A DNA stretch of 63,118 nucleotides, the filler included, from Octopus bimaculoides (lineage: Eukaryota), in NCBI RefSeq assembly GCF_001194135.2. It is 4 parts of 4 records of this genome, joined end to end, with 100 filler letters (N's around TTAATTAATTAA, not from the genome) between each part and the next. Parts side by side here need not be neighbours in the genome. Positions count along the whole stretch, not along the records: positions 34,679 to 58,244 come from NC_069010.1; 3 more parts are not named here. One strand, 5' to 3'. Positions 40,336 through 52,500 of this stretch are shown piece after piece. The stretch's first letter is position 1, and every line of letters begins with the position of its first letter. The notes beneath the pieces were generated by a model that did no database searches, was not told the DNA's origin, and saw nothing but the letters and a program-made list of their open reading frames with translations. The translations under genes were made by a program, and so were the position numbers.

Positions 40336-42915
40336 GTCTCACACCCACCAGTTTCTGGCAATGATAGTTCAGGCCATGCATGACCTCCACAACTTCACAC
40401 TAATGTTACAAATAAATTAAAGTTTAATTTAAAAATTAAATCTGGAGTTAAACTGATTTTTATATGGGTGTTTTGTTGAGGGTTTTGTTTTTCTAGGGCT
40501 GTGGATTGAATACTCGTTTATGCATCCCATATAACCCCTCCTAACTTTTATATTTTGGGGTATTTTCAGAAAACACTTGCGAATTTGTGTTCTACACACA
40601 GGAATTCAAATGGTCATGAAAAATGGGTTTTTACAGGTGGCATTATGTCATGCATGTCATGAGACTTTTGCCATTATGTCATGCATGAGAAGAAGACCCA
40701 TCAAGCCAAGCAAAATCACAGTCATGGTAGATATAGGTGGCACATAAAAGCACCCCCCATGGCACATAAAAGCACCCATTACTCTAGATTTTGTTGTTAC
40801 AATTTTACAGGCATGGCTGTGTGGTAACAAGCTTGCTTCTCAGCCTCATAGTTCCGAGTTCAGTCCCACTGCATGACACCTTGGGCAAGTGTCTTTTACT
40901 ATAGCCTCAGGCCGACCAAAGCCTTGTGAGTGGATTTGGTAGACGGAAACTGAAAGAAGCCTGTCATGTATATATTTATATATATATATATATATATATC
41001 GCCTGACTGGCCTCATGCGGGTGGCACGTAAAAGCACCCACTACACTCTTGGAGTGGTTGGTGTTAGGAAGGGCATCCAGCTGTAGAAACTCTACCAAAT
41101 CAGGATTGGAGCCTGGTCTAGCCATCCGGTTTCACCAGTCCTCAGTCNNNNNNNNNNGTGAGTGGATTTGGTAGACGGAAACTGAAAGAAGCCTGTCATG
41201 TATATATTTATATATATATATATATATATATCGCCTGACTGGCCTCATGCGGGTGGCACGTAAAAGCACCCACTACACTCTTGGAGTGGTTGGTGTTAGG
41301 AAGGGCATCCAGCTGTAGAAACTCTACCAAATCAGGATTGGAGCCTGGTCTAGCCATCCGGTTTCACCAGTCCTCAGTCAAATCGTCTAACCCATGCTAG
41401 CATGGAAAGCGGACGTTAAACGATGATGATGATGATGTGTGTGTGTGGAAGTGCAATGGCCCAGTGGTTAGGGCAGCGGACTCATGGCCATAGGATTGCG
41501 ATTTTGATTTCCAGACCAATTGAACAACATGGGAATCAAAGGGGTCCATGGGTAAAAAATAGTTGGAAAACATTGTTCTAGAGCAGGGGGTCACCAAACT
41601 TTTTCCAGAGCGGGCCAGCTAAATAAGAGAATAACAAGCGCTGGCCGCATAGCCATTTTGTTCAATACAATACAGTAAATACACAAAAAATAAAGACAAC
41701 TAACATATTTATTTACCAAAAAGTTATTAAAGAACGCAATGTTAGCAATAAGATGGTTATATCACACCCAATGCATACATAGGTGCAGGAGTGGTTGTGT
41801 GGTAAGTAGCTTGTTTACCAACTGCATGGTTCCGGGTTCATTTCCACTGCATGACACCTTGGGCAAGTGTCTTCTACTATAGCCTCGGGCCGACCAAAGC
41901 CTTGTGAGTGGATTTGGTAGGCGGAAACTGAAAGAAGCCCGTCGTATATATGTATGTGTGTGTATATGCTTGTGTGTCTGTGTTTGTCCCCCCTCAACAT
42001 CGCTTGACAACCGATGCTGGTGTGTTTACGTCCCCGTAACTTAGCGGTTTGGGAAATGGGACCGATAGAATAAGTACTAGGCTTCCAAATAATAAGTCCT
42101 GGGGTCGATTTGCTCGACTAAAAAGGGCGGTGCTCCAGCATGGCTGCAGTCAAATGACTGAAACAAGTAAAAGAGTATATCCGAATTTCACTTTTAAGAG
42201 GAGGTGATAATTCAAAGGATATAGTGAAACAGATACAGGTGTTTTGTTGTAGAGGAAGTATAAGGTTACCCAGCCGGAGAGAGAAAGATCTGGAAGGAAG
42301 GCAGAAACAGGTGAGCTACTGCAAAGAAAATACATGGTTGCCTAACCCGAGGGAAGTGCAGGTTAGGCAACCCTGTATCGAGGTCGATAAATTAAGTACC
42401 AGTTACGTACTGGGGATCAATCTAATTGTCTGGCCCTCTCCCCCCAAATTTCGGTGAGTGGTTATATCCTCGTTACCTAGTGTTTCGGCAAAGAAGATAG
42501 ACAGAAAAAGTATCAGGCTTTAAAGAAAGAGAAGTACTGGCATACATTCGCTCGAGGAATTCTTCAAGGCGGTGCTCCAGCATGGCCGCAGTTTAACGAC
42601 TGAAACAAGTGGCTCCGATATATATGTATGCGATGGGCTTCTTTCAGTTTCTGTCTGAGACTATAGTAAAAGAAATTCGCCGAAGGTGCCACACAGTGAG
42701 ACTGAACCCGAAACCTCATGGTTAGGAAGCAATATTCTTGCCACACAGCCACGCATGCGCCTCACTATTGTTTGTTGTTCAAATCCGTTGATGTTTTGAT
42801 ATCGGAGACAAATTCGGATCGCTGATGGAAGGAAGGACAGAGGGACGGAGGCGAGGAGAGAAGGAAGGAAGAAAGGGAGGGAGGAAAGACTGATTAAAGA
42901 CTTACGATATAAAAT

Positions 42916-44260
42916 CCGGACTTTTGCTTAAAGAAAGACGATTAATGACTTCACCGGAATTTCAAATAAAGGACTAGACCAGATTGCGCACACGCATATA
43001 CACACAGAATTTTCAAAAATTTACGCTGGATGATTTATAGAAAGAAAGACTGTTTTTCGAAAATTAAATTTTATATGAGACGAAATATTGAAAAATATGT
43101 AAAGATTGTTCAAGACTGAAGTGTATATAGCAAGCTTTATTAATGATTAACCGAAGCCGGACTTTTTATACGAAGGGGAACGGTTAAAGACAGAACCGGG
43201 CTTTGACATAAAGGAATATGTTTAATGGCCAGAGCGAGCAAGGCCAAACTGGACTTCAGTGTAAAAGGAGGCGTTAGAGGCCATGCTGTAGTGGTCGAAA
43301 ATAGGACAAGGACAAGCTGGAGTTTTACATTAAAGGAAATCGGTTCCAGGCTAGAGAAAACTACGCCGGACAGGTCACTGATAAGAACAAAACAAGACCG
43401 GACAAGCTATAGACTTGGCCGGACTAGCTAAAAACTGGACAAGGCAGGGAGACGTTAGACATCAAAGAAGTACTGGCCGGACTGGTTACAGATCAGAACA
43501 AGATTTAAGCTGGAGTTTTACACTAAAGGAAGGCCGGTCAAGACCAAGCCGGACAAGCTATATACTAGGACAAAGCCAGGCCGGACAAGCTAAAGACCAG
43601 ATACAGCCAGTGACACGTTAGAAATTATAGAAGGCAAGGCCGGATGGCTTAAAGACCAGGCTGGAATCTTACATTAAAGGAAGCCGGTTCAAGAGGAGAG
43701 AAAACCGGGCCGAACAGGTTATTGACCAGGGGTAGGTCAGACTGGAGTTTTATGTGGAGGTAGTCTTTAAGGATCAAACAAGGACAGACCGGACTGGCTG
43801 AAAATCAAGTAGAGCCATACTGGACTTTTACATAAATAAAATTCACGTATGACCGGGTGAGACGAGGCCGGACTTCAGCATAAAGGAAAGTGGTTGACGA
43901 TCAGAAAAGACCAAACCGACCAGGACAAGACCAAGCCGGAGTTTCATGTAAAGGACAGCAGTTGAAAGACCAGGTAAAGCCAGGATGGAATTTTACGTTA
44001 AAGGAGGGCGATTCGAGTCCAGACTAAGTCAGAGCCAGACTGGACTTTTACATAAGTAAAATTCACGTATGACCGGGCGAGACGAGGCCGGACTTCAGCA
44101 TAAAGGAAAGTTGTTGACGATCAGAAAAAGACCAAACCGACCAGGACAAGACCAAGCCGGAGTTTCATGTAAAGGACGGTAGTTCAAAGGCCAGGCTGGA
44201 ATTTTACGTTGAAGGAGGGCGATTCGAGTCCAGACTAAGTCAGGGCCAGACTGGACTTTG
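42916..44260 (+). repeat. Non-coding array of about 19 degenerate CYGGANTTY..TAAAGGA motifs with a terminal about 220-bp tandem duplication
   Basis: Motif starts near 42916, 42954, 43157, 43196, 43249, 43317, 43510, 43661, 43742, 43820, 43868, 43936, 43985, 44040, 44088, 44157, 44196 and 44251. 43821-44040 is duplicated at 44041-44251. Confidence 0.85.
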
Positions 44261-44295
44261 GTCTTTTGTGAAGAAAGAGAGGATGCGAAGGAGAG

Positions 44296-45169
44296 ATGGA
44301 CTGCGACATCAAATCTGAAAACTATAGTATTAGCAATAACAACAACAACAACAACAACAGTAATAATAGCAATAATGGTAACATTGATATTATTATTAAT
44401 AAGAACGATGACGACGACGACGATAACAAACATGTTATTCACATTGAAGACGACTCTCCGACCGCGACCACCACAGTTAATTCCGTCGAAGACAACCTCG
44501 TCGATACCAAAGGCAGTGCAAACAACAGCAGCAGCAGTGCATCAAACGTCACAACAAACACCGCGACCAACAACAGCAGCAGCAGTGAGCTCCGCCGTCA
44601 ACACTATCTCCTCCAGGAGCAGCGTTATCGCCATCTACAGCAACAGAGACAACAACAGCGCCACGTGAACAGCCGCAGCATCAACATCACATCATCGTCG
44701 TCATCGTCACCATCGTTGTCATCATCGTTAAACTCGTCGTCGTCCTCGTCCACCACCACCGCCTCCTCCTCCTCCTCCTCCTCCAACACCACCACTTCCA
44801 CCACAAATACTATCACCACTACCACCCCCACCACTCACAACAACTACAGGAACAACAACAAACATGTCGATAAAACGTTCGGTTTGTTGAAGTGTGACTC
44901 CGAATGTGTGCCGCAAGAGAAGCTGGTGGAGTTTTTGGCCAGCAAGCCGAAATTCAACCAGGCTGTCATGATTAGGAAAGGCAGGCAAATTATGCGGAAA
45001 GATTTGGTAGGCATCGAAGAAGGACCCAACGGATTTCTTACAGATATATTCCATCCTGTGTTTGCAATCACGCCTTCCAGGAGGTGCATTGTCGTGAAAG
45101 AGGACCTCTTGTGCAACGGCGAAGGAAGCTGTCGACGAAAATGTGGCGGAATCGGGGACTGCATTATTG
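44296..45169 (+). CDS. Exon 1 of a 4-exon Cys/His-cluster (WRKY-GCM1/FAR1-like zinc finger) gene
   Basis: ATG 44296 with an in-frame stop upstream at 44236. Low-complexity N-terminus, then globular sequence ending CNGEGSCRRKCGGIGDCII. Donor G|GTAAGT at 45169/45170 (phase 1). An upstream exon using acceptor ttttgtgaag (44273) cannot be excluded. Confidence 0.85.
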
Positions 45170-45867
45170 GTAAGTCTCTCAGACCGTTCAATATCTTTCC
45201 TTGCACGTCATCATCATCATCATCATCATTTAATGTCTGTTGTTTTCTGTGCTGATATGGGTTGGACGGCTTGACAGGGACTGGCAAGGTCAGGCAGGGA
45301 CTACACCAGGTCCCATAGCCTGTTTTAGCTTGGTTTCTACAACTGGATGCCCTTCCTAATGCCAACCACTCCATATAGTGTACTGAGGGCGTTTTATGTG
45401 GCACCATTACCAATGCTTTTTACGTGGTACCAGTACCCACACCAATGCTTTTTATATGGAACCTTTTAGGATCACAATTCTGTTGAGGTGGGCCACTCTG
45501 TACACACACACATACACATGACAAACATATATACAACAGGCTTTTTTCAGTTTCTGTCTACCAAATTCATTCAACATGCTTTAGTCAGCCCAAGGCTATG
45601 TATGGTATAAGACACTTGTCCAACATGAAGTGGAACTGAACCCAGAACCATGTGGTTGGGAAGCTAACTTCTTAACCACCATCATCATCATCATTGTCAT
45701 CGTCAACATCCTCATCATCATCATCGTTGTTGTCATCATCATCGTCATCGTCACCACCATCGTCATCGTCACCACCATCGTCGTCATCATATGTTGTTTC
45801 TCTAGCAGGGATTGGACTATGTGTAATTCTATGTGTAATTCTTTTATTGTGTCCATTTTTTTTCCAG

Positions 45868-46037
45868 ATTGTCCAAAGAAGACCGAACGGGCCAAGATGG
45901 GCCACCGCTGCTCCTTCAAAGTTCTCCTCACTATGCATTCCGACCAGATAGGTATGTGGGAGGTGAAACTGATCGGAAGTCACATGGAGCCGGAATACGC
46001 GTGGGTGCCACCCATCAAGAAAGTAAAATGGAGAAAG
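45868..46037 (+). CDS. Exon 2 of the zinc-finger-like gene
   Basis: Acceptor ttttttttccag. Phase 1 gives DCPKKTERAKMGHRCSFKVLLTMHSDQIGMWEVKLIGSHMEPEYAWVPPIKKVKWRK. Donor AAG|GTATTG (phase 0). Confidence 0.88.
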
Positions 46038-46873: not shown

Positions 46874-47011
46874 GTCCATTCCCACACAAAGGCACTGAAA
46901 AAAGCTCTCCAACACCGAAAGAATTCAGTTCTGCAATTCGATTGGCCAGTGAAACCAAGTTTTGCAGCTGAAAAAAAAGAAACCACAGAATTCTTGATCC
47001 AGACAAATTCT
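46874..47011 (+). CDS. Exon 3 of the zinc-finger-like gene
   Basis: Acceptor aatttcag, 138 nt open in phase 0 (VHSHTKALKKALQHRKNSVLQFDWPVKPSFAAEKKETTEFLIQTNS), donor TCT|GTGAGT. Confidence 0.78.
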
Positions 47012-47327: not shown

Positions 47328-47660
47328 CGAAGGCTGTGTGGTTAGGAAGCTTGCTTCCCAGCTACATGGTTTCAGGTTCAGTCCCACTGCGTGGCACCTT
47401 GGGCAAGTGTCTTCTCCTATAGCCCCGGGCCGAACGAAGCTTTGTGATTGAATTTGGTAGGCGGAAGTTACTGCCGTGTGTGTATATGTCTGTGTATGTG
47501 CCTCTCCGAAAGAGAGAGAGAGAAGACACAGTTGGACTGTATATATATATATATATGTATGTATGTATGTATATGCATGTGTATTTATGTATAGATATGT
47601 ATACATGTACATGCAAACTGTGTATATAATTATCGATTACCTTTTCTTTTTAATTTCCAG

Positions 47661-48605
47661 TTTGAGAAGTCGACCCCGTTAGCCATGGAATCCAGCAACA
47701 TCTGCGGACTATCCTCTTCACAGCTGAGCCAGATTCAATCCCAGATGTTTGTCCAAAAAGAAGAGGCAGCCTTCGAAGAATTTCCGACCAACAACGACCA
47801 AATGGACAACTGCAACAGTAGCTCCTCAGGCCAACTGGCCGTATACTCCACTGCCGGCACCACTGCTGCCAATCAGAACTCTATGGTGTACCAGAAGGTC
47901 GAACTCTGCGATGACTACGATGACTATTATATAGATAGTGGCCATCAACATAGTGGTGGTGGCAGTGGCGGAGGAAGTGGTATTGGTGGTGGTGGTGGAG
48001 TTGTTGATGATGATGACGATGACAATAACGAAGATGATGACAATGCTGATGACGGTTACTCCAGCATCATTAATATGAATTTCAACGGCATCCGCAGCGC
48101 CAACATCAACAACAACAACAATAACAGTAACTTCTTTGTCAACAACAGCAACAGCAAGACCAACAGCAGCAACGCTGTGGCGTCTGCCGCTTCTTCCGCT
48201 GCCGCTGCTGCTGCGGCAGCTGGGATGGTCCGGCTGTTACCGCTGTCGTCCGCTTCCGCTGCATCCTCGGCAGCGGCGGCCGCTGCTGCTGCTTCCGCTG
48301 CTGCCACCGCGATGGACTTCTCGGAGGCGGCGGTCGGAAAAAGTGGCAGGATTGGGGCGGGTGGTGTTGGTGGCGGCGGTTTGGAAGAGGTGGTGGAGGA
48401 CACTCTTAGCTTTGAGGAACACCTCTTGGACTTCCATCGTGCCGAACACGAACAACGGATGGCGTTTATGTCGCAGGAACATCTTGCGAAGATGGAGGTG
48501 ATCGCTTTGGAGAAGGACATTGCTTTGTTGAAGAGACAGAAACTGGTCAACGAACTCGGCGCCAGTTTGAAGAAATGTGACAATATTCTCTTGACAGAGC
48601 AATGA
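47661..48605 (+). CDS. Exon 4 (terminal) of the zinc-finger-like gene
   Basis: Acceptor cttttctttttaatttccag in phase 0, in frame with ORF 47685-48605. Poly-G/D/N/A tracts and C-terminal EHEQRMAFMSQEHLAKMEVIALEKDIALLKRQKL coil. AATAAA near 49161. Confidence 0.88.
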   Translation, partial: FEKSTPLAMESSNICGLSSSQLSQIQSQMFVQKEEAAFEEFPTNNDQMDNCNSSSSGQLAVYSTAGTTAANQNSMVYQKVELCDDYDDYYIDSGHQHSGGGSGGGSGIGGGGGVVDDDDDDNNEDDDNADDGYSSIINMNFNGIRSANINNNNNNSNFFVNNSNSKTNSSNAVASAASSAAAAAAAAGMVRLLPLSSASAASSAAAAAAAASAAATAMDFSEAAVGKSGRIGAGGVGGGGLEEVVEDTLSFEEHLLDFHRAEHEQRMAFMSQEHLAKMEVIALEKDIALLKRQKLVNELGASLKKCDNILLTEQ

Positions 48606-51821: not shown

Positions 51822-52500
51822 CAGAGTCTTGCAGATAAATTGGGACCAATTCTAATCCTCTTCTTCATTTTTCAGGTAAATAGCAAACTAATTCGACAAC
51901 AGAAAAGTCATGGAACAACAGAAACGTTTCACCATTGTTACTTTGGCATGTGCCAGGCACGCTACCAATAAAATTGTTAAGCTGACGAAACTTCCAAAAG
52001 CAACAGTTTATTGTGTGTATGAACAATTCAAAGAGGGAAAGATTGATAGAAAAGAACACAAAACTCAAAGTGATTCCAAGTGCTTTCCAAAGTTTCCCAA
52101 TGGCCTCAAATGCTCGATTGGAGCCAACCCACCCACGTCAACTGTTGCAAAGAAACGCAATGTGTCCCTTTTTACGGTGTTCAGAGCTGTGTACAGGAAC
52201 CTTGGCATGACTAGCTATGTTTGATGACGCCATCATCTCCTAACAGCCGAGACCAAAGCAATCAGAGCTTCTGTCATTCATCAAGCATCAAGGTGCAGGA
52301 AACATTCACATGTTTGTGGATGAGAAGTTTACTGTGGATGCTGAGGTGAATCGCAGAAATTCTCGACTGATTGCATACAACCCTTCAGGTGTCCCCACTG
52401 CATTTGAGACCAAGAATCCTGTATCTGTGATGGTATTTGGAGTCGTGGAAAGTGATAGAAGTGTCATGGATCCACACTTCATTGAGTCTGGCTGCAATCA
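51822..52500 (+). mobile_element. Decayed, 3'-truncated Tc1/maT-like (probable D,D37D) transposon
   Basis: TA|cagagtcttgcagataaattgggacc end, HTH-like ORF 51910-52224, and FVDEKFTVDAEVNRRNSR...TKNPVSVMVFGVVESD catalytic-domain start. Confidence 0.8.

What the first reader, a model, noticed from the sequence alone, without database searches (positions are those of the whole stretch)
42916..44260. 1.35-kb array of about 19 oriented CYGGANTTY..TAAAGGA motifs directly upstream of a putative DNA-binding gene
Seen: a motif of about 20 nt recurs in one orientation, mostly at irregular 38-69-nt spacing with a few longer gaps. It is interspersed with a second motif (CCGGACAAGCTA-like, about 9 copies at 43376-43800) and ends in a 220/211-bp tandem duplication 36-45 bp before the ATG. 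Copies shift reading frame and stops intervene, so it is non-coding. CCGG density is striking for this AT-rich window. Established: transposases often bind subterminal repeat arrays. Inference: this may be a retained binding-site array for the adjacent zinc-finger protein (autoregulation or a domesticated-transposon relic), a methylation-sensitive regulatory array, or a multivalent RNA element in a long 5' UTR. The GGANTTY half resembles Rel/NF-kB sites but lacks the terminal CC.
Basis: partly seen in the sequence, partly recalled or inferred. Interest (0 to 1): 0.7.

Follow-up and report, generated by a model that had tools for sequence, protein, structure and literature searches.

The report
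Degenerate tandem repeat upstream of octopus gene
The motif array is real, but it looks like an ordinary, locally grown and decaying tandem repeat (complex minisatellite) just upstream of an uncharacterised Octopus bimaculoides gene, and nothing I could test shows that it has a function.

Summary
Observation confirmed. Window 42916-44260 (+) holds about 18-19 same-strand copies of CYGGANTTY..TAAAGGA. About 10 shorter CCGGAC-type copies lie among them, and the array ends in a 220/224-bp tandem duplication (95.5% identical) 36 bp before the ATG. CCGG occurs 21 times against 3.3 expected. The DNA is non-coding.

The window is Octopus bimaculoides chromosome CM046630.1. The gene is LOC106879828 (XP_014785019.2, 708 aa, four exons). 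Its Cys/His domain matches no Pfam family, but its predicted structure resembles WRKY DNA-binding domains, so "putative DNA-binding" is plausible.

The copies are related along their whole ~50-bp units and in higher-order blocks of 150-220 bp, old at the 5' end and young at the 3' end. The Y in CYGG is CpG-to-TpG decay. Mismatches between the two young copies fall inside and outside the motif alike.

A unit profile finds no copy in 158 kb of other cephalopod DNA, including the syntenic Argonauta hians orthologue and two paralogue loci. There are no terminal inverted repeats, no RNA family match and no significant RNA fold.

Best reading: a lineage-specific complex minisatellite. A role as a transcription-factor site cluster is not excluded. 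Close Octopus orthologues and the whole genome could not be searched.

The parts
42916..44260 (+). The whole array: about 18-19 type-A units (CYGGANTTY..TAAAGGA plus a spacer, about 38-69 nt each) and about 10 shorter type-B units (CCGGACAAGCTA-like), all in one orientation. The + strand is 62% purine.
42916..43306 (+). The oldest and most degenerate part. Units start at 42916, 42954, (43026, weak), 43157, 43196 and 43249, interrupted by about 130 nt of AT-rich sequence.
   Evidence: lowest profile scores; about 70-75% identity to later blocks
43307..43809 (+). The middle part: three higher-order blocks (43307-43499, 43500-43650, 43651-43809). Each holds one type-A unit, several type-B units and a shared ACGTTAGA segment. 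The blocks are about 73-80% identical outside the motif.
   Evidence: (families D1, D6, D8, D10, D11)
43807..44026 (+). Copy 1 of the youngest higher-order block (220 bp, four type-A units).
   Evidence: (D5, D9, D2)
44027..44250 (+). Copy 2 of the youngest block, 95.5% identical to copy 1 with one 10-bp deletion. It is followed by a truncated unit start at 44251-44260.
42827..42886 (+). A polypurine GGAA/GA-like tract directly 5' of the array. Argonauta has a 440-bp (AG)n tract ending 8 nt before its ATG. Whether the two tracts are homologous is uncertain.
44296..45169 (+). Coding exon 1 of LOC106879828 (XP_014785019.2). It encodes a low-complexity N-terminus and then the first half of the Cys/His domain, which starts at residue 190 (window 44863).
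   Evidence: (the exact 708-aa product is in the collection)
45868..46037 (+). Coding exon 2: the second half of the Cys/His domain (residues 292-348). It is conserved in Argonauta (74.5% at DNA level).
46874..47011 (+). Coding exon 3 (46 aa).
47661..48605 (+). Coding exon 4, including the stop codon. Its C-terminal motif LDFHR..EH...CDNI.LTE is also present in a spliced cephalopod transcript (L002).

Best explanation
The array is a lineage-specific complex minisatellite. An ancestral unit of about 50 bp, roughly (A/G)AG(A/G)CCA(A/G)G-CCGGA-N-TTTTACAT-AAAGGAA-..GGTTCAAGACCAG, was multiplied head to tail by unequal exchange or replication slippage. This happened first at the level of single units and later in blocks of 150-220 bp. 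The most recent block duplication lies next to the gene. The copies have since decayed by point mutation, mainly CpG transitions that turn CCGG into CTGG or CCAG, and by small indels that produce the irregular spacing. On this reading the 'motif' is the best-surviving stretch of the unit, and the second motif (CCGGACAAGCTA) is a shortened derivative sharing the CCGGAC head. Shown: repeat anatomy, common descent of whole units, an age gradient, the CpG-type variation, local uniqueness, and absence from the Argonauta orthologue and two paralogue loci. Inferred: neutral origin, and no sequence-specific function beyond any generic effect of a CpG-retaining, purine-rich repeat next to a start codon.
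For: Units align beyond the motif. The 61-nt consensus carries conserved spacer blocks (GGTTcAAGACCAG), and the unit tail resembles the next unit's head. Higher-order blocks align along their full length, including non-motif segments such as ACGTTAGA. There is an age gradient: 95.5% identity for the 3'-most pair, about 73-80% for the middle blocks, and the weakest profile scores at the 5' end. Of 32 anchors, 19 are CCGG, 11 CTGG, 1 ATGG and 1 CCGA, so 12 of 13 variants are CpG transitions. Between the two youngest copies, 3 mismatches lie in 84 motif columns and 7 in 126 non-motif columns (96% versus 94% identity, p = 0.74). All copies share one orientation, as tandem duplication predicts. The unit profile and a sensitive blastn find nothing in 158,514 bases of other cephalopod DNA. 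That set includes the rest of the piece, 12.7 kb further upstream, the syntenic Argonauta locus, and paralogue loci in O. bimaculoides (64 kb) and O. sinensis (31 kb). Synteny with Argonauta is secure: the ELMO1-like last exon lies upstream and exons 1-2 are conserved. No known transcription-factor consensus that I tried recurs in the array.
Against: Motif columns are a little better conserved than aligned non-motif columns in 14 of 15 block comparisons (typically about 0.87 versus 0.73; one comparison has p = 0.009). These comparisons are not independent, and the motif was defined after the fact as the best-conserved stretch. The array ends 36 bp from the start codon of a probable DNA-binding gene. 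It lies in a 3.8-kb stretch with CpG observed/expected of 0.72-1.03, against about 0.4 in neighbouring intergenic and intron DNA, which is what an unmethylated promoter region would show. Neutrality is inferred, not demonstrated. Argonauta is a distant relative, so absence there says only that the array is not ancient.
Confidence: 0.6

Rival explanations
1. The array is a homotypic cluster of transcription-factor binding sites, that is, a promoter-proximal regulatory module. Each type-A core would be a site for a sequence-specific factor. Candidates are the WRKY-like product of the adjacent gene (autoregulation) or one of the many octopus C2H2 zinc-finger proteins. The array would then set the expression level of LOC106879828.
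For: The array sits 36 bp from the ATG. The core is slightly better conserved than the spacers in 14 of 15 comparisons. CpG is retained, consistent with a germline-unmethylated regulatory region. The adjacent protein has eight invariant Cys/His ligands and a confident model (pLDDT 82.8) whose best PDB matches are WRKY DNA-binding domains.
Against: No copy exists at the Argonauta orthologue or at two paralogue loci. The youngest copies mutate inside the motif as often as outside it. No complete W-box, GCM, kappaB, ETS, D-box or Grainyhead consensus is enriched. Any word contained in a repeat unit is 'enriched' by construction, so enrichment alone is not evidence.
Confidence: 0.2
2. The array is a relic of a mobile element, either subterminal or internal tandem repeats of a DNA transposon or Helitron, or a member of a dispersed satellite family.
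For: Transposons often carry such arrays, and the window is full of SINE copies, one of them 150 bp upstream at 42618-42762.
Against: No terminal inverted repeats flank the array; the only inverted pair is a 15-nt match inside it. There is no transposase ORF. The array shows no similarity to the SINEs or to anything else in 158 kb of cephalopod DNA. The neighbouring gene is a syntenic, intron-containing host gene with orthologues in Argonauta and a spliced transcript in another cephalopod.
Confidence: 0.08
3. The array is transcribed and acts as a multivalent RNA element in a long 5' UTR, or as a non-coding RNA.
For: A TATAAAA lies at 42908-42914, just before the first unit. The array is strand-asymmetric, with 62% purine on the sense strand.
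Against: There is no Rfam match at E <= 1. The minimum free energy of 43300-44295 is not different from shuffles (z = -1.21). The + strand carries 16 upstream ATGs and 22-24 stops per frame. The homologous transcript from another cephalopod has a 373-nt AT-rich 5' UTR with no such repeat.
Confidence: 0.05
4. The array is an assembly artefact, with the duplication created by mis-assembly.
For: Two other 'perfect' tandem duplications in the piece (36029-36515 and 40926-41379) each flank a 10-N gap and look like scaffolding artefacts.
Against: The array contains no N. Its copies differ by 4.5% and by indels, and the older copies differ by 20-30%, so they are not collapsed or duplicated reads.
Confidence: 0.03

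Closest known systems
Complex or compound minisatellites (VNTR-type tandem repeats, including promoter-proximal ones such as MNS16A near hTERT, PMC3750000; general description in PMC8096271 and PMC10502081)
   Same: Head-to-tail units of tens of bp in a single orientation. Units are of more than one type and are organised in higher-order blocks. Copies are degenerate, with a young pair at one end. The location is non-coding and near a gene start.
   Different: Copy-number polymorphism, the defining population property of a VNTR, could not be tested. The units here are unusually irregular in length (16-69 nt). TRF did not report the array, not even the 220-bp pair.
Homotypic binding-site clusters in regulatory or insulator DNA, for example the 12 Su(Hw) sites of the gypsy insulator (from my own knowledge)
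   Same: Many oriented, degenerate copies of a motif of about 20 nt with variable spacers, in a short stretch near a transcription unit.
   Different: No binding factor is known. There is no conservation at the one orthologue available, and no extra constraint on the motif in the youngest copies.
Subterminal repeat arrays of DNA transposons (hAT, CACTA and Mutator types; from my own knowledge)
   Same: Short, oriented, repeated motifs that serve as transposase binding sites.
   Different: There are no terminal inverted repeats, no target-site duplication, no mirrored array at a second end, no transposase and no other copy.
WRKY-GCM1 zinc-finger superfamily (WRKY, GCM, FLYWCH, FAR1 and MULE DNA-binding domains; Babu et al. 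2006, from my own knowledge). This applies to the neighbouring gene only.
   Same: The predicted beta-sheet fold has Cys/His zinc ligands. The top Foldseek matches are WRKY DNA-binding domains (7z0u probability 0.97, TM-score 0.58 on the target). One family member gives a faint DBD_Tnp_Mut hit (E = 0.15).
   Different: There are eight conserved ligands (two zinc sites) and an extra N-terminal alpha/beta part. No sequence-profile match to any Pfam or PDB entry was found. The Foldseek E-value is only 0.06.

Membership tests
Minisatellite / complex tandem repeat | Units of about 10-100 bp arranged head to tail in one orientation | tested here: met
   18 profile hits, all on the + strand and contiguous over 42913-44262; anchor list
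Minisatellite / complex tandem repeat | Units are homologous over their whole length, not only at a short motif | tested here: met
   Unit alignment A1 has conserved spacer blocks. Block alignment A3 shows 68-80% identity in non-motif columns.
Minisatellite / complex tandem repeat | Evidence of ongoing or recent duplication | tested here: met
   A 220/224-bp pair at 95.5% identity
Minisatellite / complex tandem repeat | Copy number varies between individuals (VNTR) | not testable with these tools
   Only one assembly (GCA_001194135.2) was reachable. No Logan contig carries the exon-1 ORF.
Transposon subterminal-repeat array / dispersed satellite | Terminal inverted repeats or target-site duplication around the element | tested here: not met
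   The only inverted pair is a 15-nt match inside the array
Transposon subterminal-repeat array / dispersed satellite | Further copies elsewhere in the genome | tested here: inconclusive
   None in 158,514 bases of cephalopod DNA. This excludes only very abundant families, because the whole genome could not be searched.
Functional transcription-factor site cluster | Motif under stronger constraint than the spacer | tested here: inconclusive
   Motif identity exceeds non-motif identity in 14 of 15 block pairs, but the pairs are not independent and the motif was chosen after the fact. The youngest pair shows no difference (p = 0.74).
Functional transcription-factor site cluster | Presence at orthologous loci | tested here: not met
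   0 motif hits and no similarity at the syntenic Argonauta hians locus.
Functional transcription-factor site cluster | Bound by a factor, with an effect on expression | not testable with these tools
   Needs EMSA or DAP-seq, ATAC-seq and reporter assays
Rel/NF-kB site (GGGRNNYYCC) | Complete consensus, including the terminal CC | tested here: not met
   0 matches to GGGRNNYYCC or GGRNNYYCC on either strand of the array
Structured RNA family | Match to an Rfam model, or a fold more stable than shuffles | tested here: not met
   No Rfam hit in the array at E <= 1; z = -1.21
WRKY-GCM1 zinc finger (neighbouring gene) | Beta-sheet fold with Cys/His zinc ligands, similar to solved WRKY or GCM domains | tested here: met
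   Eight invariant or near-invariant ligands. Model pLDDT 82.8, pTM 0.76. Five of the top 15 Foldseek PDB hits are WRKY domains, the best with probability 0.97 and E = 0.06. This support is moderate, not strong.
WRKY-GCM1 zinc finger (neighbouring gene) | Sequence-profile membership in a described family | tested here: not met
   No Pfam hit; no PDB sequence hit

The most novel reading that the evidence does not exclude
The array is a young, Octopus-lineage-specific cis-regulatory module. It would consist of 18 or more oriented sites of about 20 nt that recruit a sequence-specific factor to the promoter of LOC106879828. That factor could be the WRKY-like product of the adjacent gene or one of the expanded octopus C2H2 zinc-finger proteins. 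Tandem duplication would then act as a tuner of expression.
Probability: 0.12. Interest if true: 0.55.

Novelty: new member of a known kind. Interest (0 to 1): 0.2.

Why it matters
As it stands, this is one more private minisatellite in a repeat-rich cephalopod genome, useful mainly as a caution. An oriented motif array next to a gene can arise purely by local tandem duplication, and the degenerate position in its consensus (the Y in CYGG) can be CpG decay rather than binding-site degeneracy. If the array proved to be bound and to act in a copy-number-dependent way, it would be a clean example of a promoter element born by tandem duplication. The neighbouring gene may be the more useful lead. 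It belongs to an undescribed, conserved mollusc and amphioxus family with a WRKY-like double-zinc domain and no Pfam model.

Tried and rejected
1) Finding the orthologous locus in close relatives (O. sinensis, O. vulgaris). No hit was longer than about 1.75 times the query (271, 81 and 569 aa at most), so full-length orthologues and full-length ELMO1 proteins never appeared. Cluster look-ups returned only O. bimaculoides members for the gene and its ELMO neighbour. No annotated gene lies within 10 kb downstream to serve as another anchor.

2) An exact look-up of the exon-1 ORF in Logan and other assemblies, hoping for an independent assembly or a polymorphic allele: nothing on record.

3) LOC115226066 of O. 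sinensis (L006) as a possible orthologue: rejected. It shows only 32% protein identity and shares only dispersed repeats with the window.

4) TRF did not report the array, not even the 220-bp pair. The repeat finder and pairwise alignment were needed instead.

5) Known transcription-factor consensus scans (kappaB, ETS, D-box, GCM, W-box, Grainyhead, CNRG-N6-CNRG). Only the low-information CNRG-N6-CNRG pattern is 'enriched' (18 observed against 1.4 expected). That follows automatically from its being part of the repeat unit, so I did not count it as evidence.

6) Literature searches for the locus name and for described octopus satellites or minisatellites found nothing specific.

7) Rfam scan, RNA folding, and Pfam and PDB sequence searches of the protein domain were all negative.

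Full report
SOURCE AND CONTEXT

The piece is 100% identical to Octopus bimaculoides chromosome record CM046630.1 of assembly GCA_001194135.2 (window coordinate = L003 coordinate + 22009). The last coding exon of an ELMO1-like gene lies upstream at 35605-35757.

The gene downstream of the array is LOC106879828. A four-exon model (44296-45169, 45868-46037, 46874-47011, 47661-48605) translates to exactly the 708-aa XP_014785019.2. The exon order is supported in two ways. A spliced transcript from another, unidentified cephalopod-like sample has the same structure and a 373-nt AT-rich 5' UTR (L002, SRR8281692). The syntenic locus of Argonauta hians has ELMO upstream and conserved exons 1 and 2 (L001).

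THE OBSERVATION

- The rigid pattern gives 13 hits in the array against 1.8 expected in the whole window.
- A profile of the units gives 18 hits, all on the + strand and confined to 42913-44262.
- The second motif gives 4 strict copies against 0.04 expected, and about 10 looser ones.
- Spacing is irregular, with no dominant period apart from the 211-221 lag of the terminal duplication.
- That duplication is 43807-44026 versus 44027-44250, 95.5% identical, and is followed by a truncated unit ending 36 bp before the ATG.
- CCGG occurs 21 times against 3.3 expected.
- Each + frame has 22-24 stops.

ANATOMY

Anchoring on CYGGA splits the region into 32 segments of 5-131 nt. The 17 clear type-A units align over about 60 nt to this consensus: nAAGnCCAnG CTGGAnTTTTACATnAAAGGAA nnnGnTTnAAGACCAG... 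The similarity therefore extends into the 'spacer', and the tail of one unit resembles the head of the next.

Type-B units share the CCGGAC head and an A-rich tail, and look like shortened derivatives.

The units are grouped into higher-order blocks of 150-220 bp that align along their full length, including non-motif segments such as ACGTTAGA. Identity rises from about 70-75% for the 5' block, through 73-80% for the middle blocks, to 95.5% for the 3' pair. The array therefore grew stepwise, most recently at the end nearest the gene.

WHAT THE DEGENERATE POSITIONS MEAN

Of the 32 anchors, 19 are CCGG, 11 CTGG, 1 ATGG and 1 CCGA. Twelve of the 13 departures from CCGG are thus CpG transitions. 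Decayed type-B units appear as CCAGAC or CCAGGAC.

CpG observed/expected is 0.85 in the array, 0.72 in the 1.5 kb upstream and 1.03 in exon 1. It is about 0.4 in nearby intergenic and intron DNA. Either the whole 41.4-45.2 kb stretch is little methylated in the germ line, or the array is young. I cannot separate these two readings.

IS THE MOTIF UNDER EXTRA CONSTRAINT?

Between the two youngest copies, 3 mismatches fall in 84 motif columns and 7 in 126 other columns (p = 0.74).

Among older blocks, motif columns are somewhat better conserved in 14 of 15 comparisons (typically 0.87 versus 0.73; one has p = 0.009). These comparisons share sequences, gapped alignment inflates identity, and the motif was chosen because it is the best-conserved part. 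I read this as a weak hint, not as evidence of selection.

IS IT ELSEWHERE?

A sensitive blastn and the unit profile find nothing in 158,514 bases of other cephalopod DNA. That set comprises:
- the remaining 22 kb of the piece;
- 12.7 kb further upstream;
- the syntenic Argonauta locus (27 kb);
- the locus of the O. bimaculoides paralogue LOC106869118 (64 kb);
- the locus of the O. sinensis paralogue LOC115226066 (31 kb);
- the transcript L002.

Pattern counts at these loci are at chance level.

In Argonauta the start codon of the exon-1 ORF (8765) follows a 440-bp (AG)n tract by 8 nt. In O. bimaculoides a 60-nt polypurine tract (42827-42886) lies just 5' of the array. One possible history is that the array expanded between such a tract and the ATG in the octopus lineage. 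This is inference only.

The whole O. bimaculoides genome and the orthologous loci of close Octopus species could not be searched. The array is therefore shown to be locally unique and not ancient, but not shown to be single-copy.

OTHER READINGS TESTED

- Transposon relic: no terminal inverted repeats, no second arm, no transposase and no similarity to the SINEs that fill the window.
- RNA element: no Rfam match, folding no better than shuffles (z = -1.21), and 16 upstream ATGs.
- Rel/NF-kB: no complete consensus. The same holds for ETS, GCM, W-box, D-box and Grainyhead sites.
- Assembly artefact: two other perfect duplications in the piece flank 10-N gaps and are suspect. The array has no gap, and its copies are diverged.

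THE NEIGHBOURING GENE

Residues 190-348 form a conserved domain with no Pfam or PDB sequence match. An exhaustive search found 62 cluster representatives. Those I looked up come from molluscs (Octopus paralogues, Pomacea, Elysia, Biomphalaria, Mya, Aplysia) and from amphioxus; two clusters, from Logan and ENA assemblies, carry no names.

Eight Cys/His positions are invariant or nearly so: C-x5-C-x3-C-x5-C-x3-C ... H-x-C ... H. The AlphaFold model is confident (pLDDT 82.8, pTM 0.76). Its best PDB matches are WRKY DNA-binding domains (7z0u probability 0.97, E = 0.06, TM-score 0.58 on the target).

'Putative DNA-binding' is therefore reasonable, at moderate confidence. Nothing links this domain to the array's motif.

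VERDICT

The most likely explanation (about 0.6) is a lineage-specific complex minisatellite that grew by local tandem duplication and is decaying, with no demonstrated function. A functional transcription-factor site cluster remains possible (about 0.2) and needs experiments or close-species comparison. The finding is of low general interest. The undescribed WRKY-like gene family next to it is the more promising by-product.

Noticed in passing
window 44863-46037 (residues 190-348 of XP_014785019.2); alignment A2: An undescribed, conserved Cys/His domain family with eight conserved zinc ligands. It has 62 representatives; those looked up come from molluscs and amphioxus, and at least two are octopus paralogues. 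It has no Pfam model. Its predicted fold resembles WRKY DNA-binding domains.
   Followed up: partly
window 36029-36515 and 40926-41379: Two near-perfect or perfect tandem duplications (248 bp x2 and 232 bp x2) each flank a 10-N gap (36267-36276, 41148-41157). They are probably scaffolding or gap artefacts of the assembly rather than biology.
   Followed up: partly
window 35605-35757; L003 1-13748: The ELMO1-like gene upstream is annotated as two separate models (546 aa and 81 aa) with N gaps between them. This is probably one gene split by assembly gaps.
   Followed up: no
window 34679-34863, 40808-40989, 41781-41980, 42618-42762, 47332-47466, 57748-57950: Many copies, 75-92% identical, of the same short interspersed element occur on both strands. 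One lies 150 bp upstream of the array. It is also present in the O. sinensis and Argonauta loci.
   Followed up: partly
L001 8320-8756 and 8765; window 42827-42886: In Argonauta hians a 440-bp (AG)n tract ends 8 nt before the start codon of the orthologous exon 1. O. bimaculoides has a 60-nt polypurine tract just 5' of the array. In both species the sense strand directly upstream of this gene is purine-rich repeat DNA.
   Followed up: partly
window 44296-44860 and 47900-48400 (protein residues 1-189 and about 430-620): The O. bimaculoides protein carries very long low-complexity runs (poly-N, S/T, D, A, G). These are absent from the roughly 386-aa homologue encoded by transcript L002 and differ in Argonauta. 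The trinucleotide-repeat coding sequence is evolving rapidly.
   Followed up: no
window 51910-52224 (+): A 104-aa ORF has a weak helix-turn-helix (HTH_23, E = 0.009) resemblance. It may be a remnant of a Tc1/mariner-type transposase.
   Followed up: no
window 42908-42914: A TATAAAA sits immediately before the first repeat unit. If it were a real TATA box, the whole array would be transcribed. In this AT-rich DNA it may well be chance.
   Followed up: no
tool behaviour: In all three homologous-protein searches no hit was longer than about 1.75 times the query length. Short domain queries therefore cannot retrieve long full-length relatives. This hid any full-length Octopus orthologues.
   Followed up: partly
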